DNA from: Chrysemys picta bellii
Lineage: Eukaryota
Assembly (NCBI RefSeq): GCF_011386835.1
Contig: NC_088814.1
Location: 992,001-1,056,000 of the forward strand
Direction: 5' to 3'
Length of the DNA: 64,000 nucleotides
The stretch's first letter is position 1. Every line of letters begins with the position of its first letter. Positions 4,626 to 63,731 of this stretch are shown here, piece after piece. Below the pieces are notes generated by a model. It did no database searches. It was given only the letters and a program-made list of their open reading frames with translations, and was not told the DNA's origin. The translations under genes and the position numbers were made by a program.

Positions 4626-4899
4626 CTCAGGACTGGAATAGCGGGTCAGGGCTGAGGTCAAGTGACCGTTTATATTTTAAAAGCAATAAATGACAACTGT
4701 GTGACAAATGCAGGACAAAGCTATTTCTGAAAGGGCACAACCACAACCACTTTTATTTGTGGTACAAACTCCTATATTTGTACCACAGCGGCTGATTCTC
4801 TGCAGGATTAGGGCTCAAAAACAGGCTTGTTAAGTCTGCTCACATGCTCCTTGGCTCTGCATGGCACAGGGGGCTTGGGACAAGAGATGCTGAATGAGG

Positions 4900-13680: not shown

Positions 13681-14153
13681 TGTCACGGAGTTTTGGGGAA
13701 CTCAGGGCCCTGCACCCCCCGCTTCCTGCGATTCACCATGACTCTCAGCCAGCCAGTAAAGCAGAAGGTTTATTTGGATGACAGGAATACAGTCCAAGAC
13801 AGGTCTTGCAGGCACAGACAACAGGGCCCCCCTCAGTTAGGTCCAGCTTGGGGTCCCAGGGCATGCCAGCCCACCCCCCTTGGGGGGTCAGAGCCATCTC
13901 TGCCTCCCAGCCATCTCTCCAGCCTCCTTCCAGCCTGCTTCCAGCACTCTGCCTTCAGCGCCCCCTCCCACAGCCTTTGTTCAGTTTCCCGGGCCCCGGA
14001 GTCATCTGACCTCCAACCCCCTCCTGGGTTCTCATGTTACAAGCTCAGGTATGTTCCCTTGGGCCGGCTCCCATCCCCCGATGCAGACCATCCTAGTCAC
14101 ACTCCCCTGTCAGCATTCACACACCCCAGCAAGAACAGTCCCAGTTCGTCACA
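13681..14153 (-). repeat. 3' LTR (473 bp)
   Basis: tgtcacgg...cgtcaca; appears identical to 17314-17786, and the three-frame ORF translations agree across both copies. AATAAA on the minus strand at 13769-13774. Confidence 0.95.
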
Positions 14154-14167
14154 TCTCTCCCCCCTTC
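14154..14167 (-). other. Polypurine tract
   Basis: GAAGGGGGGAGAGA directly abutting the 3' LTR on the minus strand. Confidence 0.85.
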
Positions 14168-14219
14168 GAGACCGAACTGAGCAGGGTCACTTTAGCCAGT
14201 GACCCGGGGAAGTTCGAAC

Positions 14220-16973: not shown

Positions 16974-17293
16974 CTTCCTGCTGGCCACTCACCGGCCTGT
17001 GTGCTCACAGCTCCCCACAGTTCCCAGGGGGACCCCTAGTGTGCCAGCCCTTCTCGAGGTCACCACCTCTCTGCCAGGGTCGAGCTGCAGACTCCTCCGC
17101 CCCTGGGACCACTCGCTGCGATCCCCCCAGGGGACCCTGTTACTGCAAAAGTCCTTCTCGCTGGTCACACACTCCCAGGGGTAATAACCGTCTCTCTCCC
17201 ACTCTTCAGCGTGCCTGGTCCCCGTCAATCCCCCTTCGTTTTACTGCTCCCCAGTCACTTACTGCAGGAAGCGCCGTCCACGGGGTGCAGTAG

Positions 17294-17311
17294 ATCCCGC
17301 CGCTGCCACCA
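17294..17311 (-). other. Primer-binding site complementary to the tRNA-Leu 3' end
   Basis: Plus strand atcccgccgctgccacca against the vertebrate tRNA-Leu(AAG/UAG) 3' end ATCCCACCGCTGCCACCA from memory (17/18); 2 nt from the 5' LTR. Confidence 0.8.
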
Positions 17312-17313
17312 GT

Positions 17314-17786
17314 TGTCACGGAGTTTTGGGGAACTCAGGGCCCTGCACCCCCCGCTTCCTGCGATTCACCATGACTCTCAGCCAGCCAGTAAAGCAGAAG
17401 GTTTATTTGGATGACAGGAATACAGTCCAAGACAGGTCTTGCAGGCACAGACAACAGGGCCCCCCTCAGTTAGGTCCAGCTTGGGGTCCCAGGGCATGCC
17501 AGCCCACCCCCCTTGGGGGGTCAGAGCCATCTCTGCCTCCCAGCCATCTCTCCAGCCTCCTTCCAGCCTGCTTCCAGCACTCTGCCTTCAGCGCCCCCTC
17601 CCACAGCCTTTGTTCAGTTTCCCGGGCCCCGGAGTCATCTGACCTCCAACCCCCTCCTGGGTTCTCATGTTACAAGCTCAGGTATGTTCCCTTGGGCCGG
17701 CTCCCATCCCCCGATGCAGACCATCCTAGTCACACTCCCCTGTCAGCATTCACACACCCCAGCAAGAACAGTCCCAGTTCGTCACA
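17314..17786 (-). repeat. 5' LTR (473 bp)
   Basis: Direct repeat of 13681-14153. Confidence 0.95.
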
Positions 17787-17791
17787 CTGAC

Positions 17792-41460: not shown

Positions 41461-41716
41461 TCAGGACTGCATCTTGCCGTCCTTGCTCCTCCACACCACC
41501 AGGGTGACCAGGAAAGGGATGAGGCAGATGGGGGTGACGATGAGGGCCAGCAGCACGTCCTCTGGTGGGTCGAGGAAGACGGGGTACTCCTGGGTGCAGT
41601 TCAGGAAGAAAATGCGGTGGCTCTGGACGATGCACTCCTCGGCGATGCTGTTGGGGTAGCCGTAATTCTGTTTTTCGGCGAAGGTCTCCAGGCAGTGGCG
41701 GAGGTCGCTGTATGGC
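41461..41716 (-). CDS. RAMP2: RAMP2 exon 4: (R)PYSDLRHCLETFAEKQNYGYPNSIAEECIVQSHRIFFLNCTQEYPVFLDPPEDVLLALIVTPICLIPFLVTLVVWRSKDGKMQS*
   Basis: RAMP2 hallmarks PYSDL..CLE, DPPEDVLLA, PICLIPFL.TLVVWRSKD; acceptor ctcccccccag; TGA at 41461-41463. Confidence 0.95.
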
Positions 41717-42144
41717 CTGGGGGGGAGAGGGGACAAGCTGGGGAGTTTCCTACGGGACTGATGCATTATCCGGTGCTGTAAACTGGCTGTGGACCAGCAA
41801 GAACCGCAGCTGAGGAGCTGGGTTGGCTCACTGTGCCAGGACGGTCCCTTGCCGCAGGGCTGGCTGCTTTGCCCTGCCCCCAGCATACAACCGCCTCGTT
41901 CCCAACTCCCCGCTACCCTGCACCTCACACAGCCACGGGCCCCAGGCAACGTGGGGAGGACGCTGCTGCGTGCTCCAGCAGCTCTTTGCAGCTGCTTTGC
42001 ACGGGTGGAAATGGGGAACGCAGGGAACTGAGCCCATCAGTTGTCATGTGTGAGACTCCCTGACTGGCCTGTTGGGTCGCACTGCCAGGGGCTGGCTGGG
42101 CAGGGTGGGTGGAGCCTGGCTCCTCTCACCCACTGAGCTGCATA

Positions 42145-42262
42145 AAGGAGGCAGCCTCATTAGCCCCCTTGTACAGATGGGGAAACCGAGGCACGGGAAG
42201 GGCCATGGCTTGCCCAAGATCATGCAGCAGAGCTGGGAATTAACCCAGGACCCGAGTCCCGG
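42145..42262 (-). mobile_element. MIR/CORE-SINE remnant in RAMP2 intron 3
   Basis: ttgtacagatggggaaaccgaggcac...gcttgcccaagatca is the reverse complement of the MIR core. Confidence 0.6.
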
Positions 42263-42659
42263 TGTGGTTCCTTGCCCACTAGAACCACACCCCACCCCAG
42301 CCCTGCCCACAGGGCACGCACAAAGCCAGGCACACGCCTTCAAGCTGTGCCGTGGGAGCGCACGGGGGGCTGGAGAGGAGCTGGGGGGCAGCAGGGGGCA
42401 GGGAACACGAAAGCCCTGCATGTTTCAGCCACGCCCGGCTCTCCACAGGCCATGCTGACGCCAGACCTGCGCCGAGCAAAGCAGCAGGTGGGTTGGGTTC
42501 CTCAGCGGGCCGGGCGAGGGCCAGCAGGCCCCTGGGGAGCAGGTTAGAGTTGACAGCTCTGGGCTTGTTGGGAGGCAGACACAGCCGAAGTGCTGCCCAC
42601 CTTGGGAACCAGCTACAAGGACACCCACCTTGTGTTTCAGCTTTGCCTGCCAGGTGGAG

Positions 42660-42930
42660 TCCCCCTCCCTCTCCTCTTCCTCGTCCCCATCCCAACGTCC
42701 CCTACCCGTCTCCCTCCCATCCTGACCCTCTCCATCCCCATCCCGACCCCCCTTTCCTCGCCCCCTCCCTCTCCTCTTCCTCATCCCCATCCCAACGTTC
42801 CCTCCCCATCCCCCTCCCATCCCGACCCCCCCTTCCTCGCCCCCTCCTTCTCCTCTTCCTCGTCCCCATCCCAACGTCCCCTCCCTGTCCCCCTCCCATC
42901 CCGACCCCCCCCTTCCTCGCCCCCTCCCTG
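42660..42930. repeat. Pyrimidine-rich tandem repeat (about 75-100 bp, 3 copies)
   Basis: ctcctcttcctcgtccccatcccaacgtcccct...cccgacccccc repeated; strong purine/pyrimidine strand asymmetry. Confidence 0.85.
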
Positions 42931-43574
42931 TGGTGCTAGGTGCTCCACACGGCTCTGGAAATCAGTGTCCATTAACACACCCGAGTGCTCGGCGAACTCC
43001 CAGGTCCAAGCGGCCAGCGGGTCACAGGTGCCAGGCAGGAGGCAGGGCAGCTGGCCCCAGCCTGGGGAAAGAGGCTCCAGCACCTTGGACCCTCGGGCTG
43101 CTCGGCTGGGGCTGCTGGGGATTTCGGGCTTTTCAAACCAGCTGGGCCGGTTCCCCAAACACCTCATGCCCCTTTGGCACGTCCCGGTGGCCACACGGCT
43201 GGAGACTAACAGTTCCGCTCGGTTAGCGCCGGCGCATCGGAAATCGGGAACAAAACCAGCCTTTTCCTTTCATTCAACGTTCCCTGCAGAAAACAATCCC
43301 CAGCCCCAGCCGGGTGTCGGGCTCAGTGGGGCCCGGTAGAGCCAGTGGGACGCACACCCCTGCCACCCCACATGGGGTTCTCTGCTGGGTTCCCAGCCTC
43401 CCGGGTCTGAGAGCCCTGTGTGCTTTGCCCCCCGCGCCTCTGCTGGGCTGCTCGGGGCTCTCTGCAGCTCACAGGCTGGTGCCTGGTGGAAAGGGCTCTG
43501 CTGGGAACCAACAAGCAAACGCCACCGTGCGGCTTCATGCCCGGGGCTGGCCAATCCCCCGGCCCCGGCGGTAC

Positions 43575-43677
43575 CTGCTGATGACTCTCCATTCACACAG
43601 CTGCACCCTGGTCACGTTCATCATCCAGTGACTGAAATTGGCCCAGCAAATGAAGGCGTTCAGATTGTACAACTCAT
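43575..43677 (-). CDS. RAMP2: RAMP2 exon 3 (103 nt): (D)ELYNLNAFICWANFSHWMMNVTRVQLCEWRVIS(R)
   Basis: ttcttctttccag acceptor, GTACC donor; C-W...C.W..I.R pattern; phases 1 and 2 join the neighbouring exons. Confidence 0.9.
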
Positions 43678-43915
43678 CTGGAAAGAAGAAAACCAAAGCT
43701 CTTGGCTGCTGGCTCGGGCCTGGGAGCCCAGTGCTACCCGGTGGGCAGAGCGCCCACCCCTGGGGACAGGCAGCGACCGGGACAAAGCTGGCAAGGCTGG
43801 TCTCTGACTGATTCAAGCAGCTCCCCCCTGCCCAAGCCTGGAGTCCCCTTCTCAGCTACCCCTCCCCATTGCTCGCACACCAACTCCCAGCAGGGGTGGC
43901 TCTAGGGGCCCCCTC

Positions 43916-44900
43916 TGTGATGCTGGCAGGCCAGGTGCCAGCTCATGCCAAGGTCCCCATGTCTCAACTGACCACTGACAAATACACAGCGGGGCTCAGG
44001 CTGGCTCCCCTGGGGGTTTGTGGGGTTCAAGCAGGCAGTAGAGCTATAAGAATGGGGGTTTGTGTTTATTGGATGCTTGTGAGCGGCTCTTGGCACTATC
44101 TCACGTACGTCTGTAAGGGAATAGCTGAGCCGCCATATGGAGAGCCTCTCTGACCGTGTAAATCCCCAGCCAGGAGAGGGACTTTCACTAGTGCCACGTG
44201 CTGAGCTGTAGCACGGGTGTTACATTCTGCCCGGCAGGGCAGGTCCAGCGACACCCGACGCACTATTGTGGGATGTTAAAGAGGGCAGAAGACTTGGTGG
44301 CTCTGCTCTTGACCCCCCACGGAGATGAGTCGTGCAAGTGGATTCCTCCCATCAGCTGAGTTTGCAGCTCAGAGCACAGGGGAAGAGGGGAATAAAGACC
44401 CCTGACAAGAAGGAACTGGGTCTCCATGCTGCTTGGACTCTGGGGGCAAATTTTCTAGGCAGAAGCACGGGCTTCCCCAGCTGCTTAGCCTGGATTAGTC
44501 CTAAAGAACATACGGAGCTTGCTTATTATAGAAGCTTCTAGTACCCTTTGAAACATAAGCTTGTGCATGGGTGTTTACCTGCTGTAACCTTGTGAATAAC
44601 TCTCGTGTTTCCTTTTTCCTAGTTCTAAGAACTACGTCATGTAGTTCATTATCGGATTGGCTACAAGCATTGTCTTTAGTGTGAGATCTGAGCCGGTAAG
44701 TGAACTGAATATTGCTGTGATTCTTGGTGCAAGGGACCATCTCTCGCACAGGCAGGTGCCCCTGGGTGGCCAGGCAAGGGGTACCCCAGGGGACTGGCTG
44801 TGACTCCCCGTTAAGGTTGTTATGGTGCCGGAGGGGCTCACACTGGATAATAGGCTGGTGAGATCTAAGCACGGAGCTCAGCCAATCCGGCGCAGTAACA
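43916..44900 (+). mobile_element. Old solo LTR-like insertion in RAMP2 intron 2
   Basis: Starts tgtgatgctggcagg and ends cgcagtaaca; resembles a common turtle LTR from memory. No TSD recovered, so the boundaries are approximate. Confidence 0.5.
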
Positions 44901-45491
44901 GGCTGCCCTGAGGCTGGTGCTCGTGCTCCGGAGTCACTGCAGGCAGCTTGAGGCTCTCCATCAGACAGGGCTGAGGGTGGGCCCTGGCACAGGGCGGTGC
45001 AGTATGGACCTTGCCCAGTGGCAAAGCCCCAGCCTGAGGGACTGGCTGGATGGCACTAGGCGGTGGGCTGGGGAGGGGGCCTGCGAGGGCTGGAGGGATT
45101 CAGCAGCACTTATGTGTCCAGGACCCTGGCATTCTCAGGGCAGGTTACTGTGCCCATCCCCGCTGCCTCCAGGTGCCACGTGCAAGTCCCCGGTCCTGCC
45201 CTGGTAGCGTCTCCTCCCTGGGAGCTCTCAGGCCTGCAGGGCGCGGGGTGGGGCAGGACACACAAGCCATTGAGTCGACACGGGTCAGTGGTTCCCAGCG
45301 CTGATGGAGCCTGGAGACGCCCGGGGCGATGGCCCAGCTGCACCGCCCGTTCGTTGACAACGGGAGACAGGTGCCGGGCGGAGACTTGCTAGCCAGCGCC
45401 AGGGGAGGAATCCCTGGAGTCCCGGCTTGGTCCCAGCAGGGCGAGCTCCGTCTCACTGCTCCGCCCGCGGCCGGGCGCTCCTGGCACTTAC

Positions 45492-45614
45492 CCGCGGTCA
45501 CGTTGAGGAGCAGGTCCTCAGGCTCAATCACTGTCCAGTTCTGGCGCTCAGCCAGAGACTCGTTGGCTCCCGGCGTGGCGGTGCCTGCGGGATGGAGCCC
45601 GCTCCCGAGAGCCT
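45492..45614 (-). CDS. RAMP2: RAMP2 exon 2 (123 nt): (E)ALGSGLHPAGTATPGANESLAERQNWTVIEPEDLLLNVTA
   Basis: ttccccccctcctgcag acceptor, GTAAGT donor, symmetric phase 1, three N-glycosylation sequons; restores the frame between exons 1 and 3. Confidence 0.8.
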
Positions 45615-46889
45615 CTGCAGGAGGGGGGAACCTCAGTGAGACACAGCCCACGGGTTTGCTGCTGCCCAGCCAGGTGCCCTGCCCCGAACTGGCGGCTCGC
45701 GGGGGGCAGCGACATCCCTGGGCCGGTCCCTGGGTCCCTTTAACCAGGAATCCGGACGGGGCGCAAGGGGGTTTTCGATTCTAGAGGAGACACCAGAGAA
45801 GGGGCAGCGCTGGGGTGATCTGTGTGGGCTAGAAGCAGGTCTGAGCCCGACACACCCCGGCTCCCACCCCTCCCACCTCTGGCGGCTCCATCGCTCAGCC
45901 CAACGCCCCCCGGGGCCCCCCAGGGCTTCCTGGCTCGGTGCGTCTAGAAGGAACAGCCCTGTCAGTGCGCTGGCCTGAGCACCCGCTACACGCCCACAGC
46001 CCAGCCAGGCAGCTGCAGCAGGGGTGGGCGTGGGAGCAGAAAGGGGAAGCGAAGGGGGTGCGGGCTGGAGCCACCGGCAGGGCGGAGAAGCTCCAGCCCC
46101 ATACGGCGCCTCCCACGAGCGCCTCTCCTCTTTGCACATGGGTTAGCCCAGCTCCCCAGGCAGGGATCACCCCACCCCACTGCAGAGGGCTCAGGGGCCC
46201 TGTCCCCCTGCTCTCTGCCCTGGCTGCCAGCTCCCCACACACTGCCCCATCAGTGCCTCCCCTGGGACCCCTGGGGCCAGCGGGGAGCTGGTCTCAGTGA
46301 CCTGTGCAGTCCGTGGCTTCTCCGTGGAGGCTGCCCATGGTGCCAGCTGCCATGGCGTGGGGTGGAGGAGCCTCCTCCTTGGTCCGGGTGTGGGGAGTGG
46401 GGCGGGGGCTGGTGCCCCTGCAGTTCCAGCTTGGGTGATGTATAGACGGCCCCAGTGACCAGTTTGGTAGCGGCTTCCAGAGGGCTGGCTGTGGCTGGGG
46501 GTCTCTGAGTCCCTGAGGCGTTGGGGGGCGGGGGGCTCCACTGAGGGTGCTAAGGGCCTGGGGCCCCGAACAAGAGACTTCACTACGTAGGCCGACCTGC
46601 TCGGCTCCCCCTTGGCCCCCCCTCAATTTCCCAGCTGCTCCCCCTCCCCCCACCTCTTCCTGACTGGGACAGGGACTATGGGGCTGAGTCTGTGTCCTTG
46701 GGCAGGGCAGTAAATACCTCGACTCAGAGGGGCTCTGTGAGCCTGTGGCACCCAGTGCTGATGGCTCCCAGACCATCTGGGGCCAGGCTGGGAGTGTGGT
46801 GACCCCCGGGGAGAACCTGGAGTCACCCCAGCTCGTCCCCAGGGCAAGATGAGAGTCTGGCCAGGGGTTCACAGACTGCAAGAGGAGGG

Positions 46890-47465
46890 GCTGTGGCATG
46901 GCAGGGCTGGTCGAGGGCTCAGTGGGGCTGGAGGTTGGTCTGGGATTTGCTGGAGCTGGTCCATGGCTCAGTGGGGCTGGTCCGTGGGGCTGGACTGGGG
47001 CTCAGCAGAGCTAAGGGTCTGAGCTGGGGCTCAGTGTGTCTGGGGGCTGGTCTGTGGGACTGGGGGCTGGTCTGGGGCTCAGTGGGGCTGGGGGCTGGTC
47101 CATGGGATAATGGAGCTGAGGACTGGTCCATGGGCCTGGGGGGCTGGTCCGGGGCTCAGTGGGGCTGGGGAGCTGGTCCATGGGACAATGGGGCTGGCCT
47201 AGGGCTCAGTGGGGCTGGTCCATGGGTCTGGGGGGCTGGTCTGTGGCTCAGTGGGGCTGGGGTCTAGTCTGGGTCTCAGTGGGGTTGGGGGGCTGGTCCA
47301 GGGCTAGTCTGGGGCTCAGTGGGGCTGGTCCATGGGACAATGGGTCTGGGGACTGGTCTGTGGGCTGGTCTGTGGCTCAGTGGGGCTGGGGGGCTGGTCC
47401 ATGGGACAGTGGGGCTGGTCCAGGGCTCAGCGGGGCTGAGGGGCTGGTCTGTGGGGCTGGGACTG
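46890..47465. repeat. G-rich short-unit minisatellite in RAMP2 intron 1
   Basis: Many copies of ggggctggtccatggg(acaat) and ggctcagtggggct. Confidence 0.9.
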
Positions 47466-48484
47466 GCCCCTTGCTGTCTCTCCATCTGTTCCTGCAGTTG
47501 CAGGATCTCACAGCAAGCGGCTCTTGCTCCCGTCAGCATGTCGGGGTAGGAGCAAACCCAGCCCAGCGACAGCGCTGGGCTCCGGGGCGAGGCAGCCGGC
47601 CGGCGAGAGGCCCTGTCGCACTTGTCTCCAGCACCTCTCGGGCCAGGCCCCGGGCAGCCGTTCCATGCAGCCCCTTTGGCTCGTCCGTCCTGGGGCCTTT
47701 CCCGCTTTGACTGGGAATCTCTGCCAGTCTGAGCTTCGTTAAGGTCCGTGTGTGTTTGTGCCACTAATTAGCAGGGAAGAACCAAAGGCCTTGAGCCAAG
47801 AAAACCGTCCGGTGGTGACGCGCCGCTGCCAGGTGCCAGCGCTGACCAGACCCAGGGGTGCGGAATAGCGAGGGGCGTCCCAGCCGGTCCCAGCGAGCTG
47901 CATCTCCTCGCAGACACGCGCCTGCCCCTCCAAGAGCAGGGTCCCGGGCACTGTCACGTGCATTATAACAGCGCTGCACCAAACCCAGCTACCAATCCCC
48001 CAGCCCCTCCTGGGCCCCAACCTCCATCACACCCCCAGGGACACTGAGGCACAGAAAGGGCAGGGACCTGCCTGAGGATACAGGAGCAGCCAGGGCCAGA
48101 GCTGGGGATGGAGCCCTGGGCTCCCAGCACGGGAGGGAGGGGTCCCTAAGGCCTTATCCTCCGCACAGGCTGCAGACCCCTCCCTTCAAGCCCCCCCTTT
48201 CACACAGTCCAGGGCGAAGGGGTCACTCTGAGCCCAATAGCCCATTCCTGCCCCAGGACCTCGTGTGCATTAGGGAGCCAGACCTTGGGGGCTGGGTTAG
48301 TGCTAGCTATGGGCCCCTTTGGACACCCCCCCCCCCCAGCACACAGAGCACCCTGGGGCTCCAGAGGGGTCTGGCTTGCAGAAGTTGGAACCAAGTCTTG
48401 CTTTGCCAAGTGGCCCAAAGCTGCAGCCTCCCCACCCCCAAACTCCTGGAGCTGGAGCAGACCCAGCCTGCCTGCAGCACTTAC

Positions 48485-48551
48485 CCCAGAGCAGCAACAG
48501 CAGGAGCCCGGGGCAGAGCCTGCCAGAGCCGGTCTGTCTGCAAAGTGCCAT
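48485..48551 (-). CDS. RAMP2: RAMP2 exon 1 (67 coding nt), signal peptide MALCRQTGSGRLCPGLLLLLLW; full CDS 549 nt, 182 aa
   Basis: ATG in a strong context (aggATGG), poly-Leu h-region, phase-1 GTAAGT donor; the four exons give an intact ORF. Confidence 0.82.
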
Positions 48552-49269
48552 CCTGCAAAGCCTGCCTGCTAACGGCCAGGACAGCTATTTCAACGGAAAT
48601 AACAGGAAGCAACTCCTTTCCTCTGACAGGGCTGGTAGTGACTACAGGAGACGTGTGAAAAATGAGATTACTCAGTGCTGCCTTAAACCAGACCTCCCCG
48701 TGGGACGCCCGTCAGAACAGTCCGCCTGCCGGGCCCGGCTCTGCTAGGTGTGTGCTCCACCAGCTGGGCATGGCTCCTCGGGGGCACCGAGCCTTCGCCA
48801 GCCCCGGGCGGCTCCCCGCGTCACCCCTCGCAGCTGGGGCCGGTGGGAGAGGCTCCGCTCCCTCCACCGCCCAGCAGCGTTTACGAGGCCCACTGTTTGT
48901 TTACTTGTATATTTCCCTTTAATCCCGTCTGGGCTGGGTTGTGAAATCCATTGGCTCCAAGGAGCGAACACAGAACGTGCACTAGCCCAGGACGGGCACT
49001 GCCATTAGCGAGCTGTGGGGCCGCGGGCACGGCCTGGCTAATGTGCCAAGCCCTTCCAAACACCACCTGCCCACTCCCCATCAGCCTGGGGAAGAGCCAG
49101 TCCCCCCACCGCCCTGCGGAAAGGGGCGAGATGGGGCAGCACTGGGACACCTGCCCCGGGTGCCAGGAGGCCTCGCAGCACCACTGGGGCCTCCAAGGGA
49201 AGTTACCAAAGTGGGGGTGGGGTGCTAACAGCTGCTTCGTGAAGACAAATGTGCTGTGTCAATGCCCCT

Positions 49270-49445
49270 CAATCCCGACCCGCGGCCCCCCTGCTAGCCC
49301 AGCCCTGGGCTCCCCACAGCTCTGCCAGTGCCCCTCACTCCCAACCCCCAGCCCCCCTGCTAGCCCAGCCCTGGGCTCCCCACAGCTCTGCCAGTGTCCC
49401 TCACTCCCAACCTGCAGTCCCCCTGCTAGCCCAGCCCTGGGAACC
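49270..49445. repeat. About 60-bp tandem repeat (3 copies)
   Basis: cccctgctagcccagccctgggctccccacagctctgccagtgcccctcactcccaacc; reverse complement of the 4160-4625 family. Confidence 0.85.
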
Positions 49446-50399: not shown

Positions 50400-50960
50400 T
50401 GGGAACAGAACTCCCAGCCCCCCTACTCTAACCACTAGTCCCCACTCCCCTCCCAGAGCTGGGATAGAACCCAGGAGTACTGGCTCCCAGCCCCTCCCCA
50501 CTCTAACCACTAGACCCCACTCCCCTCCCTGATCCAGGGATAGAACCCAGGAGTCCTGGCTCCCAGCATCCCCCCACCCCAAACACTAGAACCCACTCCC
50601 CTCCCTGATCCAGGCATAGAACCCAGGAGTCCTGGCTCCCAGCCCCATCCCACTCTAACCACTAGACCCCACTCCCCTCCCCGATCCAGGGATAGAACCC
50701 AGGAGTCCTGGCTCCCAGCACCCCCCCCAACACTAGACCCCACTCCCCTCCCTGATCCAGGCATAGAACCCAGGAGTCCTGGCTCCCAGCACCCCCCCCC
50801 CAAACACTAGACCCCACTCCCCTCCCCGATCCAGGCATAGAACCCAGGAGTCCTGGCTCCCAGCACCCCCCCCCAACCACTAGACCCCACTCCCCTCCCC
50901 GATCCAGGCATAGAACCCAGGAGTCCTGGCTCCCAGCACCCCGCCCCCCAACACTAGACA
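50400..50960. repeat. About 72-76 bp minisatellite (7-8 copies) directly 3' of the RAMP paralogue
   Basis: Unit cactagaccccactcccctcc..gatccaggcatagaacccaggagtcctggctcccagc. Confidence 0.95.
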
Positions 50961-51308
50961 CTCTCTCTCCCTTTCCAGTTGATGCCCAGGACTGTGCGAG
51001 ATGAAGCCCTTTGTCTGCTGAGCACAGATGGTGCCGTGGGGAGGGGCCGATCTGGCTTTGGCTCAGCCTCCCTGGCCTTGCGGAGCGTGAGAGCAACCAG
51101 GAGAGGGGTCAGGCAGGCAGGCACGGCGGCCATGGCTAGGACGGGCCCCAGAGGTGGCTGGCTGGGCTGGGAGCTGGCAGGCACGGTGCAGTTGGTGAAA
51201 TACTCCATGTGGATCTGCAGGAAGAAGGAGTCAAGAGCAGGGCTGGGCCAGGGGCAGGAGAGCGCCTCGGCCATCAGCACGGTGCAGTTGGAGAGGTCGC
51301 TGTAGATC
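50954..51308 (-). CDS. RAMP-family paralogue (RAMP5-like candidate), last exon: (R)IYSDLSNCTVLMAEALSCPWPSPALDSFFLQIHMEYFTNCTVPASSQPSQPPLGPVLAMAAVPACLTPLLVALTLRK...GRESV*
   Basis: RAMP signature Y..L.NCT...AE.L.C.WP....D.FF..IH..YF.NC, P-P linker, TM helix; acceptor ctctccctccccag at the same phase-2 position as RAMP2 exon 4. Confidence 0.88.
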
Positions 51309-51545
51309 CTGGGGAGGGAGAGGAGGGGACGTGAGGCTGAGCCTGGCCGGGCTCAGCAGCACCCAGCGCGGTGGCCCAAACAAGCCCCAAGCCGGGCACT
51401 GACTGTGCATCCGGTAACGGCAGCGACAGGGGCACCGTTCACCCGCAGGGTCCTCGTGCGCCGCACACCGCATGCACTGAGCACCCTGCAATGCAGCCAC
51501 TGCTGGGAACTGAGCAGCCACCAGCCCGCAGCCTGTGCCGCACCC

Positions 51546-51990
51546 TGCCGATGGTGCGCTGCACACACCCCCCCCCATGCGGGACGCTGCACACAGCCGA
51601 TGGTGCGCCGCACACTTCCCCCCCCCCCCACGGGACGCCACAGGCAGCCGATGGTGCGCCGCACACACACACCCCCACGCGGGACGCTGCACACAGCCGA
51701 TGGTGCGCCGCACACACACCCCCACGCGGGATGCTGCACACAGCCGATGGTGCGCCGCACCTCCCCCCCCCACGCGGGACGCTGCACACAGCCGATGGTG
51801 CACCGCAGACTCCCCCGCACGCGGGATGCTGCACACAGCCGATGGTGCGCCGCACCCCCCACACACACGGGACGCCACAGGCAGCCGATGGTGCGCCGCA
51901 CAGCCCCCCGCACGCAGGACGCCGATGGTGCGCCGCACCCCCCCCCGCACATGGGACACCACAGGCAGCCGATGGTGCACCGCACACACC
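51546..51990. repeat. CpG-rich minisatellite (about 45-50 bp, about 10 copies) in the last intron of the RAMP paralogue
   Basis: Core cagccgatggtgcgccgcac followed by variable C/CA runs and cacgcgggacgctgcaca. Confidence 0.95.
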
Positions 51991-52295
51991 CCTGCACGCG
52001 GGAGGCCACACGCACCAGAGGCACTGCACAATGCGCCCTGCTCTCAGCATGCTGACAGCTGCGCGCAGGGAAACAGGACACACGGCAGCGCTGACTTGTT
52101 TGAAAATCCCCTTCCCCCACGGGATCGTTACCAAGCCGGGGTGCTCGGCGTCCCAGAGCCCGTCTAAGAGCAAACCCCAGCGAGGCGATGCTCTCCCCCG
52201 GCACCTGCCCGTGCCCCGGCACTACATGCACTCTGCTCCCAGCCCCAGAGCGCCTCGGAAGCGCGGATCTGTCGGGGGCGGACGGGCGTCCAGAC

Positions 52296-52437
52296 CTGCC
52301 GATCTGCTCCCACTGACACCGGCTCCACTCTGGCGTGGCCATGACTGTGGCGTGGAAGGTGGTCCAGCAGTACAGGGTGATCCACTCCAGGTAGGTGTCC
52401 CTGCAGTGGGCCGACCCGCCCTCCTCGGCAAAGGGGC
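52296..52437 (-). CDS. RAMP paralogue ectodomain exon (142 nt): (G)PFAEEGGSAHCRDTYLEWITLYCWTTFHATVMATPEWSRCQWEQIG(R)
   Basis: ctaac branch point and tctctctccctag acceptor, GTCTGG donor; C...CW..F...M......C.W..I.R matches RAMP helices 1-2; phase 1 to 2. Confidence 0.88.
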
Positions 52438-53087
52438 CTAGGGAGAGAGATCTGTCTGTTAGTCACCCCTGAGGAGCCGGGGCAGAGCTCTGGGCAGGGC
52501 GGAGGCCCCGGCACTGCCATGCCAGCCTAGCCTGCTCTACCCCGGCTCCTGGCAAGGAACATAGGCTGAGGGAATGAAGGACCCCAACCCGCAGCTCCGT
52601 CCACTAGTTCTGCCCCCTGCAGCGCAGCTCCCGTCCCCTCCCACAGCCCAGCGGAGTCCAGAGCGTGCCCCTCGCCTCGGCCTGGCAGCATCAGAACCAG
52701 CCCCTGGCTCCCCGGAGAGGCTGTTCTGAGAGCCCCAGCTAAGCCACGAGATCCCAGAGGCCTGGCCAGACACTCAGCTCCCACAGTCCGGGCTGGGCTG
52801 GGCGGGATGGATCCAGGAAAGTGCCTTTGTCCCTTGCCTCCTAGCAGGGTCGGGGCCCGGAGAACAATCAGTGTTAGCAGGCTGCTGGCACGGGGCTGTG
52901 CCAGCAGGTCGTGGGTCGGGGGCCTGCCCCCAGGCTGAGCCAGAGCCCCTTAGCTCCAGGCACCATCGGCTGCTGTCTAGCGGCAGCGGGTGTCTCTGTG
53001 GTGCACGGTGCCCCCATGCAGAGCCCCCCAGTCCTGTTGGGGGGACCGACACCTGGGCATGATGGGTGCAGGGGGGGCGTCACTCAC

Positions 53088-53114
53088 CTTCCTCCTCCAA
53101 ATACAGGTAATGAC
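53088..53114 (-). CDS. RAMP paralogue micro-exon (27 nt): (S)HYLYLEEE(G)
   Basis: Strong acceptor ccttcccctttgctcttgcag and donor GTGAGT; symmetric phase 1, no stop codon. Confidence 0.7.
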
Positions 53115-53572
53115 CTGCAAGAGCAAAGGGGAAGGATCAGAGCAGGGAGGGGGCGAGCCAGCGGGGCCTGGCCAGGGTGAATCTGTCCAGCCCCTGTCTC
53201 AGCTGTGTGGGCACCATCAGCAGCGCTGGGCACCGTCTCCCTCCACCCCAGCCCAGGCTGCTCTACCCGCTAGCCAAGACCTTGGGGAATCCTCCAGGAA
53301 GGCACCCCAGGAGCAGGGGGTCCCCACGGAGCTGGGTGCCCTCAGCACTGGGTGGGAGCTCTGGGGAAACAGGTTACTGCTGGGGGGAGACCCCCAGGTG
53401 CCTGCACTTCAGCATCCCTGACAGCGCCCACCTCAGGGGCAGGAGGGGGGACACCGGGAGGGTGGGGGGGAGGTGCTATTTGTGGCACAGGGTGAAGGAG
53501 GGAGCTCAGGATCAGGCCCCCAGAATTGTTCCCGGGGTCCCACCTTGGGAGGTGAATACAGGGGACTCTTAC

Positions 53573-53611
53573 TTTCATCCTCGAGGTCTCCGTAGGTCAG
53601 CTCCCCGCGCC
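53573..53611 (-). CDS. RAMP paralogue micro-exon (39 nt): (G)RGELTYGDLEDE(S)
   Basis: Acceptor ctctcgtctcctgctgcag and donor GTAAGA; symmetric phase 1; composition matches the neighbouring micro-exon. Confidence 0.65.
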
Positions 53612-54632
53612 CTGCAGCAGGAGACGAGAGCGGTCACAGCAGAGCTGGGCTTGGGCCCCCACAGGCCATGCCACACCCAGCCCTGTCGCAAGCGGAGGGG
53701 AGGCCCCGGCTTGGAGGGAGATGCCGAAGGGGACGGCCTGGGGCTTCCCCCTGGGCCCTGGGGAGACCCCCCGTGGGGAGCAGGGCCCATGCGATCAGGC
53801 GATGCACCCCCCGCGGCTGTAGCCGGGCTGTCTGTGGGGGCCGGGCTCCGACATCGGGGGCGCTGGCACCGACAGGCTGGTTCCTGAGCAGACAGATTGA
53901 TTTTCCGGGCGGAGGAAGGTGTGCAGCAAATATCACCTCGAACTCGGCTCCGAGGCCTGGGGTGGGGCGGAGCCGGGGCGCGGGTCTAGCAGGGCAGAGA
54001 TGGAGGCAGAGGATGGAAATGCTCAGGGACTGACCGCGCCACAGGAGGAGCTGGCGTGTCCCTCCCTGGCACACACCCTCTCATAACCCTGGGGGCCAGT
54101 CCCATCCACCCCCAAGGACTTTGGATGCACTGAGCCCAGCCCACCAGGACCCCCAGTGTCTCTCGGTGCCTTGGCCCAGGACGGGCTTTCTCAGCACTGC
54201 AAGAGAGGCCCTGGCTGGGAGCATGAAATGCTGATCGGCCCCCGGGGCCGCCGACTGGCCGCAAATCACCTCAGAGCTGCTTGGCACCCGCTCTGCTCAG
54301 GGCTCCTGGGGTGGGGAGGGGTCCCCAACAGGACAGCCTGGCAGAAAGGAACCCAAACCCACGGGAGACGCGAGAGCCAGGAGCGCCCTGCTGGGGGCGG
54401 GGGGGGGGGGAGGGAAGATGGGCTGTACCCCCTCCCAAACGGTAACAAGCCCTCAGGACAGGCGTCAGCCCGACGCAGCCGACCCCCGCCCAGCCCTTCG
54501 GGGCCCTAGGGACGGGACACAAGGAGAGCGCTCGTGCCCTCCGCTCGGACCTCCCAGCTGGGTGCTGAGGGCGTCAGAGGAGCCGGGTGGGGGCTGCGTG
54601 TGCGGGAGGCAGTGATGGGCCGAGGGACGCAC

Positions 54633-54698
54633 CCTTAAGTTGCCTCGTCTGACTCCATGGTCTGTGCACACGGCCGAGTGCTGCATGAACCCCTGGGC
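54633..54698 (-). CDS. Possible RAMP paralogue exon 2 (66 nt): (G)PGVHAALGRVHRPWSQTRQLK(G)
   Basis: Donor GTGCGT, weak acceptor ccctggcgcag; symmetric phase 1; would supply a V-H-A signal-peptidase site after the exon-1 h-region. Confidence 0.45.
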
Positions 54699-55057
54699 CT
54701 GCGCCAGGGACCCCACTGGGCACCCATCCCCCCGGAGCAGCAGGGAGGGCTGGCGACCAGCCAGGGTGCTGGGATGGGGACCGGCTCCCCAAGGAGCTGG
54801 GCTCTTCATGCTGGCAATGCCAGGCAGCTGGACCGTCCCCAGGGTGCCATCTGGGTCACAAAGCAGCAGCACCTGCCCTGGGCGAGGGAGACGAGACAAA
54901 TGCAGCAGCTGGAGCCGGGGTGGTTTGCCAGGTCGGCCTCCCTCTGCCCGGGCAGCATGTCAGGCCTGGAGCCAGGCTCGGCATCCAACCCGCTGGGATC
55001 AGACCGCAGGGGCCCAGCGGGAGCTGCCAGGCCTGGCCCCACAAGCAGGACCCTTAC

Positions 55058-55115
55058 CCCACTGCAGGAGCGGGATTAGCAGCCAGTAACAGAGGCACCG
55101 GGGCTGGACAGGCAT
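55058..55115 (-). CDS. RAMP paralogue exon 1 (58 coding nt): signal peptide MPVQPRCLCYWLLIPLLQW
   Basis: ATG at 55115, hydrophobic core, ends TGG G then GTAAGG, the same W/phase-1 ending as RAMP2 exon 1. Confidence 0.7.
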
Positions 55116-55657
55116 TCTCCCCACCTGCGGGGTCAGGGCGCAGAGTTCCCCAGGAGAGGGGCAGCAGGGCCCTTCCCCAGATATCCCCCAGCCACTTATC
55201 GCCCCATCTAGCACCTGGGCTATTGGCGGCCGCCCAGCCAATGGGAGGGAAGAGGGCAGGGAAAACATGCACTCTCCCAGGGGCTGGATCTTCCAGCCTC
55301 CAAAGTCATCAGATAAGAGGTCAAGTGAGATCTCCAGGCTGCGGGTAACTGTACAGGGAGGGAGGGAGCCGGTTCCTCTGCTTGGGATGGGGCAGGGGTC
55401 TGGGGGGTTGGCAAGGGAGCGCTCCAGGCTCCGGGACTGGGGGACAGGCTGATGGCTGACTGGTGCCAGGCATTTCTGCTCACCCGCTCCAATGTCTTCC
55501 TAGCTTTGCCTCTTCTTTGCTGGATGCATTTTGTTAGGAAAACAGCCCCAGCCCCTGGAGAGCTGGGGCACTGGCTGCGGGAAGCAGAGCAGCCACACAG
55601 AGCAAAGAAACCCACCCATGGAAAATCTCCCGGTACCAAAGCTGTCTCCCACGGGAA

Positions 55658-61839: not shown

Positions 61840-62090
61840 TGTTCGCTGCAGGGGGCGGAGTCTCTTTACGTGGGCGGGACCCTGGGTTGCGGCGGACTTG
61901 TGGGCGGAGTCTTAGGAAGTGGGCAGGGCTTTGAGCACGGATACGGCTCTGAGGGGAGGAGCCTCCTGGGAGGGGGCAGGGCATGTGAGCGGCGAGGGCG
62001 GGGCGAACTGGTTGGCGCAGGCGCAGAGCACGCGGGGGGGGGGGTGCTGCGGCCTCCAGGTCACCTGAGCGCGATGGATGAGGCGTGAGT
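61840..62090 (+). promoter_or_regulatory. CpG promoter and first exon of a plus-strand gene, probably EZH1 by synteny
   Basis: At least four GGGCGG boxes (about 61852, 61870, 61901, 61997), NRF1-like gcgcaggcgca near 62016, consensus donor GTGAGT at 62085. EZH1 is divergent from RAMP2 in the human block, but no EZH1 coding sequence is visible here. Confidence 0.55.
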
Positions 62091-62099
62091 AACGGGGCC

Positions 62100-62705
62100 G
62101 GGGGGCTCTGGGGCTGGTCCGCTCCCGGGGGGAGGGGCGTGGGCCGGGGGGGGGCTCTGGGGCTGGCGGGGGGCTCTGGGGCTGGCCCCCTCCTGGGCCG
62201 GGGGGGCTCTGGGGCTGGGCCCCTCTGGGGGTAGGGGCGTGGGCCGGGGGGGCTGTGGGGCTGGCCCGCTCCCGGGGGGAGGGGCGTGGGCCGGGGGTTG
62301 CTCTGGGGCTGGGCCCCTCTGGGGGGAGGGGCGTGGGCCGGGGGTTGCTCTGGGGCTGGGCCCCTCTGGGGGGAGGGGCGTGGGCCGGGGGTTGCTATGG
62401 GGCTGGGCCCCTCTGGGGGGAGGGGCGTGGGCCGGGGGTTGCTCTGGGGCTGGGCCCCTCTGGGGGGAGGGGCGTGGGCCGGGGGTTGCTATGGGGCTGG
62501 GCCCCTCTGGGGGGAGGGGCGTGGGCCGGGGGTTGCTCTGGGGCTGGGCCCCTCCTGGGGGGAGGGGCGTGGGCCGGGGGTTGCTCTGGGGCTGGCCCGC
62601 TCCTGGGGGGAGGGGCGTGGGCCGGGGGTTGCTCTGGGGCTGGGCCCCTCCTGAGGGGAGGGGCGTGGGCCGGGGGGGCTCTCGGGCTGGGCCCCTCTGG
62701 GGGGA
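62100..62705. repeat. 47-bp G-rich minisatellite (about 12 copies) at the start of the putative EZH1 intron 1
   Basis: Unit ggggggaggggcgtgggccgggggttgctctggggctgggcccctct. Confidence 0.95.
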
Positions 62706-63731
62706 GGGGTGCTCTGTGTTGGGGTCTCCTGCGGTGTGGGAAGCAGGTATATGGGCTGACCACCCTGTGGGAGAGGGGGCTGGGGGGCCTCTGGCTATGG
62801 GGAGCACTGGGACAGGCAGGTCTGGCTGGGGTATGGGGAGTATGTGGGGTGGGGTGGATTGGTTTGGGGTTCATCTGTGGGGTTTGTTTAAGGATGTCTG
62901 GGATTGGGGTGCTGGAATAGGGGGGGTATTGGGGAGTTGGTGAGCTGGGGGTCAGATTACTGCGTGCCATCGTTTTGCCTCCAGCTAACGGGGCGGCACC
63001 ATCACACGTCCTATTTCCTTTATTTGCAATCTGTAACTAAAACGTGTGTCTGAGCACTAGGTGTTTGTTCTGCTTTTGACATTGTTCCTTCGCTCCCTGA
63101 CTTACTGGGGCTAGAACATGGGCTGAAGCCGAATGATGCTCCCCTCTGTCCCAGACGCACGTAACACCCCACTGTGCTTGTGGCTGACGCTGCTGCTGAC
63201 TCTAATTACAGTTAAATGCCCCTTTGAACATGTTTTTCTCAGCCTAACTCTGTGGTTTGTGCCGTGGAGGTTATTTTAACCCCATCACCCACAGGAGGCT
63301 TATTCCAGGCAGTAGGGAAAGCTGCCCAGGGTGCTTCTGAGGGGGTCTGGCAGTACCTCTTGTAAAAGAGACGTTTGAATGCTGGGGAACTATCACTTTG
63401 AAACTGTACCCCAAGGGGAATCAGACCGTTAAATCCCAGCCGATGACAGGAAAACAAAAGTATAATCCTGAAAACCTTCTTGTATGTCTCAGAATCCTAA
63501 TTGTCCAAAGACTTCCATACTGTTATGGTCTGCTTGGAAGTGAGGGGATCAGATCCCTACCTATGTCTCCAGGCTCTTGGGTGAACTGGAACAACAATAA
63601 TGCAAACAAGAGTTAAATGATGAACCGGAATGGACTGTAACTCCCTGCAAAGGCTAACCTGACTCCCTGGGACAATCAGGCGTGCACCTATAGTTTGCGT
63701 GAGATCAGACCCTCGTATAGTGTTGCTGCAT

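What the first reader, a model, noticed from the sequence alone, without database searches (positions are those of the whole stretch)
50954..55115. A second intact RAMP gene in tandem with RAMP2 (RAMP5-like, absent from the human locus)
Seen: five well-supported exons plus one possible exon on the minus strand splice with canonical AG/GT sites into an open 206-228 aa protein with a signal peptide, six-Cys RAMP ectodomain, TM helix and tail. It lies 2.4 kb upstream of RAMP2 exon 1 in the same orientation. Established: the human EZH1-RAMP2-VPS25-WNK4 block has one RAMP, mammals have RAMP1-3, and extra RAMPs (RAMP4/5) were described in teleosts. Inference: this is a RAMP5-type or unnamed GPCR chaperone retained in a reptile and lost in mammals. 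It would define an additional CLR/CTR receptor phenotype for CGRP, adrenomedullin or amylin family peptides. No single ORF in the track shows it, because it is split across small exons and repeats.
Basis: partly seen in the sequence, partly recalled or inferred. Interest (0 to 1): 0.9.

Follow-up and report, generated by a model that had tools for sequence, protein, structure and literature searches.

The report
A fourth RAMP gene beside RAMP2
This turtle has an intact, spliced and evolutionarily constrained fourth RAMP (GPCR accessory protein) gene between EZH1 and RAMP2; birds, lizards, crocodilians, a caecilian, the coelacanth and, by position, ray-finned fishes share it, no mammal was found to have it, and the papers searched do not treat it as a separate gene.

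Summary
Five minus-strand exons (55115-50954) with GT/AG borders give a 206-aa protein with a signal peptide, an acidic Tyr-rich arm, a six-Cys RAMP ectodomain, a TM helix and a tail. One RNA contig joins all five exons exactly at the predicted borders. The optional sixth exon has no support.

Orthologues with the same exon plan lie between EZH1 and RAMP2 in other turtles and in alligator; in Anolis the gene lies next to EZH1. Many birds, lizards, a caecilian and the coelacanth also have the gene. No mammal appeared in any search. Selection is purifying (omega 0.22).

In the trees it is neither RAMP1/3 nor inside RAMP2. It forms its own clade within the RAMP2 superclade. Gars carry a fish paralogue in the same EZH1-RAMP2 slot, so the tandem duplication most likely predates the split of ray-finned and lobe-finned fishes.

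The link to pufferfish "RAMP5" is likely but was not tested directly. A role as a CLR/CTR partner is inferred.

Public pipelines already predict the gene, under inconsistent names (RAMP1-like, RAMP2-like, uncharacterized). The papers searched still count three tetrapod RAMPs. This is a new member of a known kind, of moderate interest.

The parts
55058..55115 (-). Exon 1: start codon and signal peptide (58 nt of CDS). The 5'UTR reaches at least 55138 in the RNA contig.
   Evidence: joint 53610>55057 and record 22 (55057-55138); the signal peptide is conserved in hawksbill, softshell, alligator, caecilian and coelacanth.
53573..53611 (-). Exon 2: 39-nt micro-exon, first half of the acidic Tyr-rich N-terminal arm (GELTYGDLEDES).
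   Evidence: the same 39-nt exon is present in three other turtles and alligator.
53088..53114 (-). Exon 3: 27-nt micro-exon (HYLYLEEE).
   Evidence: the same 27-nt exon is present in turtles, alligator and Anolis.
52296..52437 (-). Exon 4: 142 nt, helix 1 and the start of helix 2 of the RAMP ectodomain (Cys53, Cys65, Cys82).
   Evidence: a 142-nt exon is conserved in turtles, alligator and Anolis, and is 148 nt in gar.
50954..51308 (-). Exon 5: rest of the ectodomain (Cys97, 107, 129), TM helix, a 38-residue tail after the TM helix (about 32 residues of it an extension seen only in cryptodiran turtles), and the stop codon.
   Evidence: Pfam RAMP E=3.8e-20; the RNA contig covers 50962-51307; the tail is absent in Emydura and alligator.
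41461..48551 (-). Neighbouring RAMP2 gene (true orthologue), same orientation, 2.4 kb downstream.
   Evidence: Last exon: Pfam RAMP 2.3e-29, human RAMP2 2.1e-32 against RAMP3 1e-12. The start at 48551 is taken from the ORF list and from collinearity with the hawksbill RAMP2 gene; that ORF has no Pfam match of its own.
62000..63525 (+). 5' end of EZH1, head-to-head with the new RAMP (placed by collinearity, not annotated here).
   Evidence: Hawksbill locus L005:18-2194 carries the EZH1 gene call (SET, preSET_CXC and other domains) and aligns to window 63525-62000.
50411..50959 (.). 76-bp tandem array (7.4 copies) starting at the stop codon, in the 3'UTR region.
   Evidence: RNA contigs pile up here at very high summed depth, with many contigs fitting several places, which marks a dispersed repeat family.

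Best explanation
The locus encodes an intact, transcribed, selectively maintained fourth RAMP-family protein. It is a type I membrane protein with a signal peptide, a conserved acidic Tyr-rich N-terminal arm, a three-helix six-Cys RAMP ectodomain, one TM helix and a short tail. It belongs to an old paralogue lineage that arose by tandem duplication with RAMP2 before ray-finned and lobe-finned fishes split. The lineage still sits between EZH1 and RAMP2 in gars, turtles and alligator, and next to EZH1 in Anolis. Coelacanth, a caecilian and many birds also carry it, and no mammalian member was found. The ray-finned-fish members are most likely what the pufferfish literature calls RAMP5. Inferred mechanism: like other RAMPs, it pairs through ectodomain helices 2-3 and its TM helix with a class B GPCR (CLR and/or CTR) in the ER, carries it to the surface and shapes the peptide pocket. 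By analogy with pufferfish RAMP5, the most likely product is an adrenomedullin-type (CLR) and amylin-type (CTR) receptor. Shown: gene structure, splicing, family membership, fold, synteny, taxonomic spread and purifying selection. Inferred: the RAMP5 equivalence, the receptor partner and the ligand.
For: Gene and RNA. In addition, 14 putative RNA runs from 8 studies and 4 related organisms hold 64-86% of the exon 5 words. Orthologues share the same 5-exon model: Pelodiscus 204 aa, hawksbill 209 aa, alligator 175 aa. Synteny: EZH1(-)|new RAMP(+)|RAMP2(+) in hawksbill and Emydura; new RAMP then RAMP2 in Pelodiscus and alligator; EZH1 then new RAMP in Anolis; EZH1 then the fish paralogue in spotted gar; the fish paralogue 9 kb upstream of RAMP2 in alligator gar. 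Selection: ML omega 0.223, 2dlnL=81 against omega=1; the ectodomain and N-arm are near 0.15. Trees: the RAMP1/3 clade separates from the RAMP2 superclade at 100/99. Inside the superclade there are three clades: fish paralogue 99/96, the clade holding the window gene 93/84, and RAMP2 of all jawed vertebrates 90/88. Rare character: the fish paralogue, the new clade and RAMP1/3 keep all six ectodomain Cys, whereas every fish and tetrapod RAMP2 in the tree except one lacks the Cys107 equivalent (L/I instead). The new gene is therefore not derived from inside RAMP2. Fold: the AF2 model of the hawksbill orthologue has pLDDT above 90 in the ectodomain and TM, and Foldseek matches the human RAMP1 ectodomain at TM 0.85-0.91, rmsd 1.1-1.6 A. 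The positions I recall as the CLR-contact residues of RAMP1 (Tyr66, Phe93, His97, Phe101) are identical in the alignment; their roles come from memory of the RAMP1 structure papers. Pufferfish CLR1+RAMP5 forms an AM1 receptor, and CTR with RAMP1-5 responds to amylin (PMC6283891).
Against: The tree does not resolve whether the fish paralogue and the tetrapod/coelacanth clade are sisters (support 48/0). AU tests cannot reject grouping the new clade with tetrapod RAMP2 (p=0.37). No named Takifugu RAMP5 sequence was retrieved, so the RAMP5 label rests on published topology plus elimination. Sauropsid members have lost residues that are near-invariant in all other RAMPs: Glu after Cys97, Asn of WPN, Asp of DPP, and Trp and Ser of the VVWxSK end of the TM. 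Their TM evolves fast (dN/dS 0.4-1.1 on few sites). Receptor pairing may therefore have changed. Spliced RNA was seen in one run only, and the tissue is unknown. The other three runs laid showed only low-depth unspliced pieces.
Confidence: 0.75

Rival explanations
1. It is a lineage-restricted duplicate of RAMP2 made in lobe-finned fishes or tetrapods. The ray-finned-fish gene in the same slot would then be an independent tandem duplicate, so there is no orthology to fish RAMP5.
For: AU tests do not reject a clade of the new genes with tetrapod RAMP2 (p=0.37, dlnL 2.4). Only 128 alignment columns are available. Tandem duplications can recur at one locus.
Against: RAMP2 of fishes and tetrapods share loss of the Cys107-equivalent, which the new clade retains together with Cys53. 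A recent origin from RAMP2 would need both Cys regained at the exact disulfide positions. The position (between EZH1 and RAMP2), the orientation and the last two exon sizes and phases are the same in gar and turtle. The coelacanth already has both genes.
Confidence: 0.12
2. It is a RAMP-fold protein that no longer serves CLR/CTR. In sauropsids it would have moved to another partner or role, for example another GPCR or a co-receptor that uses the acidic, probably sulphated, Tyr arm.
For: Sauropsid-specific loss of five near-invariant RAMP positions, including the TM-end Trp/Ser and the DPP Asp. A long sauropsid stem branch (0.63). Pfam scores fall from 138-142 bits (coelacanth, gar) to 69-94 bits (lizards, birds, turtles). 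Constraint is concentrated on the N-arm and ectodomain, not the TM.
Against: The ectodomain positions recalled as CLR contacts, and Trp84 of the peptide pocket, are conserved. The three-helix bundle is predicted with high confidence. Mammalian RAMPs already serve several class B GPCRs without such changes.
Confidence: 0.2
3. It is a decaying or non-functional copy that merely still has an open frame.
For: The tail and TM are weakly constrained in turtles. A minor nonsense isoform exists. Gene models are messy in many species.
Against: Omega is 0.22 and omega=1 is rejected (2dlnL 81). Open frames and canonical splice sites are kept in five archelosaurs, Anolis and many birds, that is, across all living reptile and bird lineages. 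A correctly spliced transcript is seen at depth 44.
Confidence: 0.03

Closest known systems
Teleost RAMP5 (Takifugu obscurus; Nag et al. 2006, as summarised in PMC2614204 and PMC6283891)
   Same: It groups with RAMP2 rather than RAMP1/3 and is described as an early RAMP2 duplicate that predates tetrapods. The only non-RAMP2 fish clade in the RAMP2 superclade occupies the same EZH1-RAMP2 slot as the turtle gene. That clade also has six Cys and the same two terminal exons.
   Different: RAMP5 was held to be fish-only and lost before tetrapods (PMC2614204). The direct sequence link was not tested here. Fish proteins lack the 39+27-nt micro-exon arm (gar has 3 exons), and they keep the DPP and VVWKS motifs that sauropsids have lost.
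RAMP2 (the tandem neighbour in the window; human RAMP2 structures 6uun, 2xvt, 3aqe)
   Same: Same superclade, same chromosomal block and orientation, a long N-terminal extension before the helical bundle, and a TM Cys at the same position.
   Different: About 29% identity to the lungfish RAMP2 representative in the family alignment and 27-30% to human RAMP2 ectodomains in the structural alignments. RAMP2 has four ectodomain Cys, the new protein six. The new gene's last exon scores human RAMP2 at only 7e-9, whereas the real turtle RAMP2 exon scores 2e-32.
RAMP1 and RAMP3 (human structures 6e3y, 2yx8, 6uus)
   Same: The six-Cys spacing is nearly identical to RAMP1. The Trp84 equivalent is kept (CPWP against CFWP). 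These are the best PDB sequence and fold matches (1e-11; TM 0.85-0.91), which explains the 'RAMP1-like' labels in databases.
   Different: Separated by a 100/99 branch in both trees. Different locus. The Trp74 position is Val here and varies across sauropsid members (Gly, Ala, Gln).

Membership tests
RAMP family (Pfam PF04901) | Profile match above the curated threshold | tested here: met
   Last exon 72 bits against a cut-off of 27. Full-length orthologues score 86-94 bits in turtles and 138 bits in coelacanth.
RAMP family (Pfam PF04901) | Type I topology: cleavable signal peptide, extracellular domain, a single TM helix, short cytoplasmic tail | tested here: met
   One hydrophobic stretch at 140-167 plus an N-terminal hydrophobic core. 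The AF2 model has helices at 8-20 and 143-170. Topology is predicted, not measured.
RAMP family (Pfam PF04901) | Three-helix-bundle ectodomain | tested here: met
   AF2 model of the hawksbill orthologue (91% identical over the 128 tree columns): helices 50-76, 85-105, 113-126, pLDDT above 90. Foldseek to the RAMP1 ectodomain gives TM 0.85-0.91, rmsd 1.1-1.6 A.
RAMP family (Pfam PF04901) | Conserved disulfide Cys pattern (six in RAMP1/3, four in RAMP2) | tested here: met
   Cys at 53, 65, 82, 97, 107 and 129, with spacing close to RAMP1. Conserved in 15-16 of 16 clade members.
RAMP family (Pfam PF04901) | Conserved juxtamembrane DPP and the TM-end VVW(K/R)SK motif | tested here: not met
   Sauropsid members have Q/G/E-P-P and T-L-(R/S)-(K/R)-A. 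The caecilian and coelacanth members keep D/E-P-P and V-W-K-N. These are conserved features rather than formal family criteria.
RAMP family (Pfam PF04901) | Binds CLR/CTR, promotes surface trafficking and alters ligand selectivity | not testable with these tools
   No CLR or CTR sequence could be obtained for complex prediction. This needs cell assays.
Fish 'RAMP5' orthogroup | Branches with RAMP2, not RAMP1/3, but outside RAMP2 proper | tested here: met
   RAMP2 superclade 100/99; RAMP2 clade 90/88 excludes it. The Cys107 character agrees. AU tests leave alternatives open.
Fish 'RAMP5' orthogroup | Orthology with the ray-finned-fish paralogue clade | tested here: inconclusive
   The synteny is the same in gars. 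The tree joins the two clades only at 48/0.
Fish 'RAMP5' orthogroup | The fish clade contains the cloned Takifugu obscurus RAMP5 | not tested
   No named pufferfish sequence was returned. The original paper and the supplement of PMC2614204 are not held.
RAMP2 (recent duplicate) | Nested inside RAMP2 and sharing the four-Cys state | tested here: not met
   It lies outside the RAMP2 clade and keeps both Cys53 and Cys107.

The most novel reading that the evidence does not exclude
In birds and reptiles this fourth RAMP has been re-tooled. It gained a conserved acidic, probably tyrosine-sulphated N-terminal arm from two micro-exons, and it lost the family's invariant juxtamembrane and TM-end residues. 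It would then either give CLR/CTR a pharmacology that no mammal has (for example a dedicated AM2/AM5 or amylin-like receptor) or serve a different GPCR altogether. If so, current three-RAMP models of avian and reptilian calcitonin-family signalling are incomplete.
Probability: 0.2. Interest if true: 0.75.

Novelty: new member of a known kind. Interest (0 to 1): 0.55.

Why it matters
Reviews and recent bird work count three RAMPs in tetrapods (PMC9832379). A 2024 chicken study tested 'all' combinations with three RAMPs (PMC11010885). The 2008 phylogeny stated that the RAMP2-derived paralogue RAMP5 was lost before tetrapods (PMC2614204). Here a fourth RAMP is shown to be intact, spliced, under purifying selection and widespread in sauropsids, and it is mislabelled in databases as RAMP1-like, RAMP2-like, RAMP1 isoform or uncharacterized. 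This would correct the family's evolutionary history: an old tandem pair with RAMP2, with no mammalian member found, which points to loss in mammals. It would also fix orthology tables and add an untested subunit to CGRP, adrenomedullin and amylin receptor pharmacology in non-mammalian models. It does not reveal a new kind of system.

Tried and rejected
- **RAMP5 link.** A profile search with the 18 fish paralogues returned 75 proteins, none from Takifugu and none named RAMP5. Nag et al. 2006 is not held, and the supplement of PMC2614204 is not held. The link stays inferred.
- **Kiwi 'RAMP2 isoform X1'.** I suspected this 422-aa protein (P0155) was a read-through fusion of the two neighbouring genes. 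Pfam finds only one RAMP domain, so I make no such claim.
- **Coelacanth synteny.** The RAMP2 protein is not in the contig index, so adjacency there was not established.
- **Caecilian synteny.** The locus has no retrievable DNA, and no neighbouring gene lies within 10 kb.
- **AU tests.** They could not discriminate the three resolutions of the RAMP2-superclade trichotomy.
- **WNK4.** Pfam gave nothing on the putative WNK4 exon 1 ORF, which holds too little of the kinase domain. The WNK4 call rests on the [34 protein letters not shown] motif, recognised from memory.
- **Runs X1, X2 and X4.** They gave only low-depth unspliced pieces over introns and exons, so they are not counted as evidence of splicing.
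- **Literature.** Searches for a fourth RAMP, or for RAMP1-like or RAMP2-like genes in tetrapods, found nothing relevant. Subscription journals are mostly outside the library.

Full report
**1.

On the minus strand, five segments are bounded by canonical AG and GT:
- 55115-55058 (58 nt from the ATG)
- 53611-53573 (39 nt)
- 53114-53088 (27 nt)
- 52437-52296 (142 nt)
- 51308-50954 (355 nt with TAG)

Joined, they give 621 nt, an open 206-aa frame. The last exon alone matches Pfam RAMP (PF04901) at E=3.8e-20, 72 bits against a curated cut-off of 27. The protein has these parts:
- an N-terminal hydrophobic core, taken as the signal peptide
- an acidic Tyr-rich stretch (GELTYGDLEDESHYLYLEEE)
- six ectodomain Cys at 53, 65, 82, 97, 107 and 129
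- one hydrophobic helix at about 140-167
- a tail

**2. RNA confirms every junction**

Of four putative RNA runs laid on 50700-55400, run X3 holds a 556-nt contig at depth 44 that joins exon 5 to 4, 4 to 3, 3 to 2 and 2 to 1. The joints are 51307>52295, 52436>53087, 53112>53571 (cut +2) and 53610>55057 (cut +1). All are CT..AC on the + strand, which is GT..AG on the coding strand.

A rare second joint (53882>55057, depth 3) uses an upstream acceptor. It shifts the frame into a stop. No sixth coding exon is seen, so the 228-aa variant is unsupported.

The other three runs show only thin unspliced coverage. Exon 5 words are held at 64-86% by 14 small, putatively RNA runs from 8 studies and 4 related organisms. 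This suggests wider expression but was not checked by laying reads.

**3. Surroundings**

- The gene 2.4 kb downstream, in the same orientation, is the true RAMP2. Its last exon matches Pfam RAMP at 2e-29 and human RAMP2 at 2e-32, against 1e-12 for RAMP3.
- The new gene's last exon matches human RAMP1, RAMP3 and RAMP2 about equally weakly (1e-11, 4e-10, 7e-9). It therefore has no mammalian counterpart among solved RAMPs.
- The window is collinear with an annotated hawksbill turtle locus. That places the 5' end of EZH1 at about 62.0-63.5 kb on the + strand, head-to-head with the new gene.
- A WNK-type first exon lies at 8963-10234 on the minus strand (recognised by motif, from memory).
I did not locate VPS25.
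- An Ensembl fragment from Chrysemys picta bellii is identical to the window, including translated intron sequence. The window therefore comes from that species or a very close relative.

**4. Orthologues and spread**

A word-indexed search, an exhaustive HMMER search of 1.84 billion representatives and a clade-profile search recover close relatives in:
- turtles: Chelonoidis, Chelonia, Eretmochelys, Platysternon, Pelodiscus, Emydura, Pelusios
- Alligator sinensis
- lizards: Anolis, Pogona, Gekko, Eublepharis, Phrynocephalus
- many birds: kiwi, emu, rhea, owls, pigeons, parrots, raptors, cranes, shearwater, cormorant, stork, cuckoo and others
- the caecilian Rhinatrema
- the coelacanth

No mammal, frog or salamander appears, and no chicken, duck or passerine is in the list. 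The absence of mammals is meaningful, given how densely they are sequenced. The other absences may be search or assembly artefacts.

Source names are chaotic: RAMP1-like, RAMP2-like, RAMP1 isoform X1-3, RAMP2 isoform X3, uncharacterized LOC.

**5. Gene structure and synteny elsewhere**

I mapped annotated proteins back to their loci with exact splice models.
- Exon sizes are 61/39/27/142/343-358 in Pelodiscus and hawksbill, and 61/39/27/142/256 in alligator.
- In Emydura the sizes are 19/39/27/142/256. The short first exon is probably a mis-annotated start.
- Anolis has 136/27/142/235.
- Spotted gar has 46/148/253.

Called neighbours:
- EZH1(-)|new RAMP(+)|RAMP2(+) in hawksbill and Emydura
- new RAMP then RAMP2 in Pelodiscus and alligator
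- EZH1 then new RAMP in Anolis
- EZH1 then the fish paralogue in spotted gar
- the fish paralogue 9 kb upstream of RAMP2, same strand, in alligator gar

**6. Phylogeny**

I built a 131-row and a focused 65-row ML tree (128 columns, LG+C20+F+G4).
- Both separate a RAMP1/RAMP3-type clade from a RAMP2 superclade at 100/99-100.
- Inside the superclade there are three clades:
  - a ray-finned-fish paralogue clade (sturgeon, paddlefish, gar, bowfin, teleosts; 99/96)
  - the clade with the window gene (coelacanth, caecilian, sauropsids; 93/84)
  - RAMP2 of jawed vertebrates (90/88)
- The ML tree joins the first two clades, but without support (48/0).
- AU tests cannot reject the other resolutions, including new clade plus tetrapod RAMP2 (p=0.37).

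An independent character helps. All six ectodomain Cys are kept in the fish paralogue, the new clade and RAMP1/3. Every fish and tetrapod RAMP2 in the tree except one has Leu or Ile at the Cys107 position, and tetrapod RAMP2 also lacks Cys53. A late origin from within RAMP2 would need both partners of a disulfide to be regained. Together with the shared genomic slot, this favours one old tandem duplication that predates the split of ray-finned and lobe-finned fishes.

**7. Selection**

- Pairwise Nei-Gojobori dN/dS is 0.18-0.39 for most pairs. It is 0.66-0.73 for Emydura against the two closest cryptodires, where dS is small.
- ML on four turtles plus alligator (149 codons, GY+F3X4) gives omega 0.223. 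Omega=1 is worse by 2dlnL=81.
- By region, the N-terminal arm and ectodomain are near 0.15.
- The TM is at 0.4-1.1 on few sites.
- The C-terminal extension of about 32 aa, present only in cryptodiran turtles, is at 0.6-0.76.

**8. Fold and residues**

An AlphaFold2 model of the hawksbill orthologue, built with a 63-sequence alignment, has pLDDT above 90 over three ectodomain helices (50-76, 85-105, 113-126) and the TM helix (143-170). Foldseek matches human RAMP1 ectodomains at TM 0.85-0.91 and rmsd 1.1-1.6 A, and RAMP2 ectodomains at 0.74-0.88.

In the HMMER alignment to human RAMP1, the positions I recall as CLR contacts (Tyr66, Phe93, His97, Phe101) and the pocket residue Trp84 are identical. 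Trp74 is Val and Phe83 is Pro (the roles are from memory).

Sauropsid members differ from all other RAMP groups at five near-invariant positions:
- the Glu two residues after Cys97
- the Asn of WPN
- the Asp of DPP
- the Trp of the VVWxSK end of the TM
- the Ser of the same motif

The caecilian and coelacanth members keep the Glu, the DPP acid and the Trp, but not the Asn or the Ser. Pfam scores fall accordingly, from 138-142 bits in coelacanth and gar to 69-94 bits in sauropsids.

**9. Mechanism**

Best supported by analogy: a RAMP that pairs with CLR and/or CTR, escorts the receptor to the surface and contributes to the peptide pocket.

Pufferfish RAMPs fall into three groups: RAMP1/4, RAMP2/5 and RAMP3. 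CLR1+RAMP5 forms an adrenomedullin-1 receptor, and CTR with any of RAMP1-5 responds to amylin (PMC6283891). The fish clade found here is the only non-RAMP2 fish lineage in the RAMP2 superclade. RAMP5 was described as an early RAMP2 duplicate that branched before tetrapods (PMC2614204). The equation is therefore likely (about 0.7) but untested.

The sauropsid-specific changes leave real room for altered pairing.

**10. Novelty**

The gene models exist in public annotation, so the locus is not undiscovered. The literature available to me treats tetrapods as having three RAMPs:
- PMC9832379 says that most organisms have three and a few fishes have five.
- PMC11010885 describes three RAMPs in avian species.
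- PMC2614204 states that RAMP5 was lost before land vertebrates.

Searches for a fourth tetrapod RAMP found nothing. The library omits most subscription journals.

I rate this as a new member of a known kind, useful to comparative endocrinology and GPCR pharmacology, with interest about 0.55.

Noticed in passing
window 50411-50959: A 76-bp tandem array (7.4 copies, 90% matches) begins right at the stop codon of the new RAMP. RNA-run contigs pile up here at summed depths of thousands, and many fit several places, so the unit belongs to a dispersed, transcribed repeat family.
   Followed up: partly
window 51536-52014: A 47/95-bp G+C-rich tandem array (about 10 copies) fills much of intron 4. An Ensembl model (P0004) wrongly translates part of this intron.
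   Followed up: partly
window 50954-51070 (residues 169-206): The C-terminal tail extension of about 32 aa occurs only in cryptodiran turtles (window, hawksbill, Pelodiscus). Emydura and alligator stop just after the TM. The extension evolves at dN/dS 0.6-0.76.
   Followed up: partly
window 53573-53611 and 53088-53114: The acidic Tyr-rich arm (GELTYGDLEDES / HYLYLEEE), encoded by 39- and 27-nt micro-exons, is conserved across turtles, alligator, birds and lizards at dN/dS about 0.15. It looks like a tyrosine-sulphation motif (inference).
   Followed up: partly
window 13693-17790: A 922-aa gag-pol-like ORF (14220-16988, minus strand) is flanked by two near-identical ORF-bearing repeats (13693-14202 and 17326-17790).
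   Followed up: no
window 8963-10234 (minus strand): A long ORF ends in a WNK-type kinase start ([34 protein letters not shown]). It is probably WNK4 exon 1, which fits the expected synteny. Pfam found nothing on it.
   Followed up: partly
window 49263-49441 and 4161-4657; L005:18000-23800: A proline-rich repeat of about 66-72 bp between the new RAMP and RAMP2 has 2.7 copies here. It is expanded to several kb in the hawksbill locus, and a related array lies near 4.2-4.6 kb of the window.
   Followed up: no
window 53882: A minor alternative acceptor is used with the exon 1 donor (depth 3 against 88). The product is frameshifted and stops early.
   Followed up: yes
fish RAMP2 proteins (alignment): Ray-finned-fish RAMP2 keeps the first Cys (the Cys53 equivalent) but lacks its disulfide partner, which leaves an unpaired Cys. 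Tetrapod RAMP2 has lost both.
   Followed up: no
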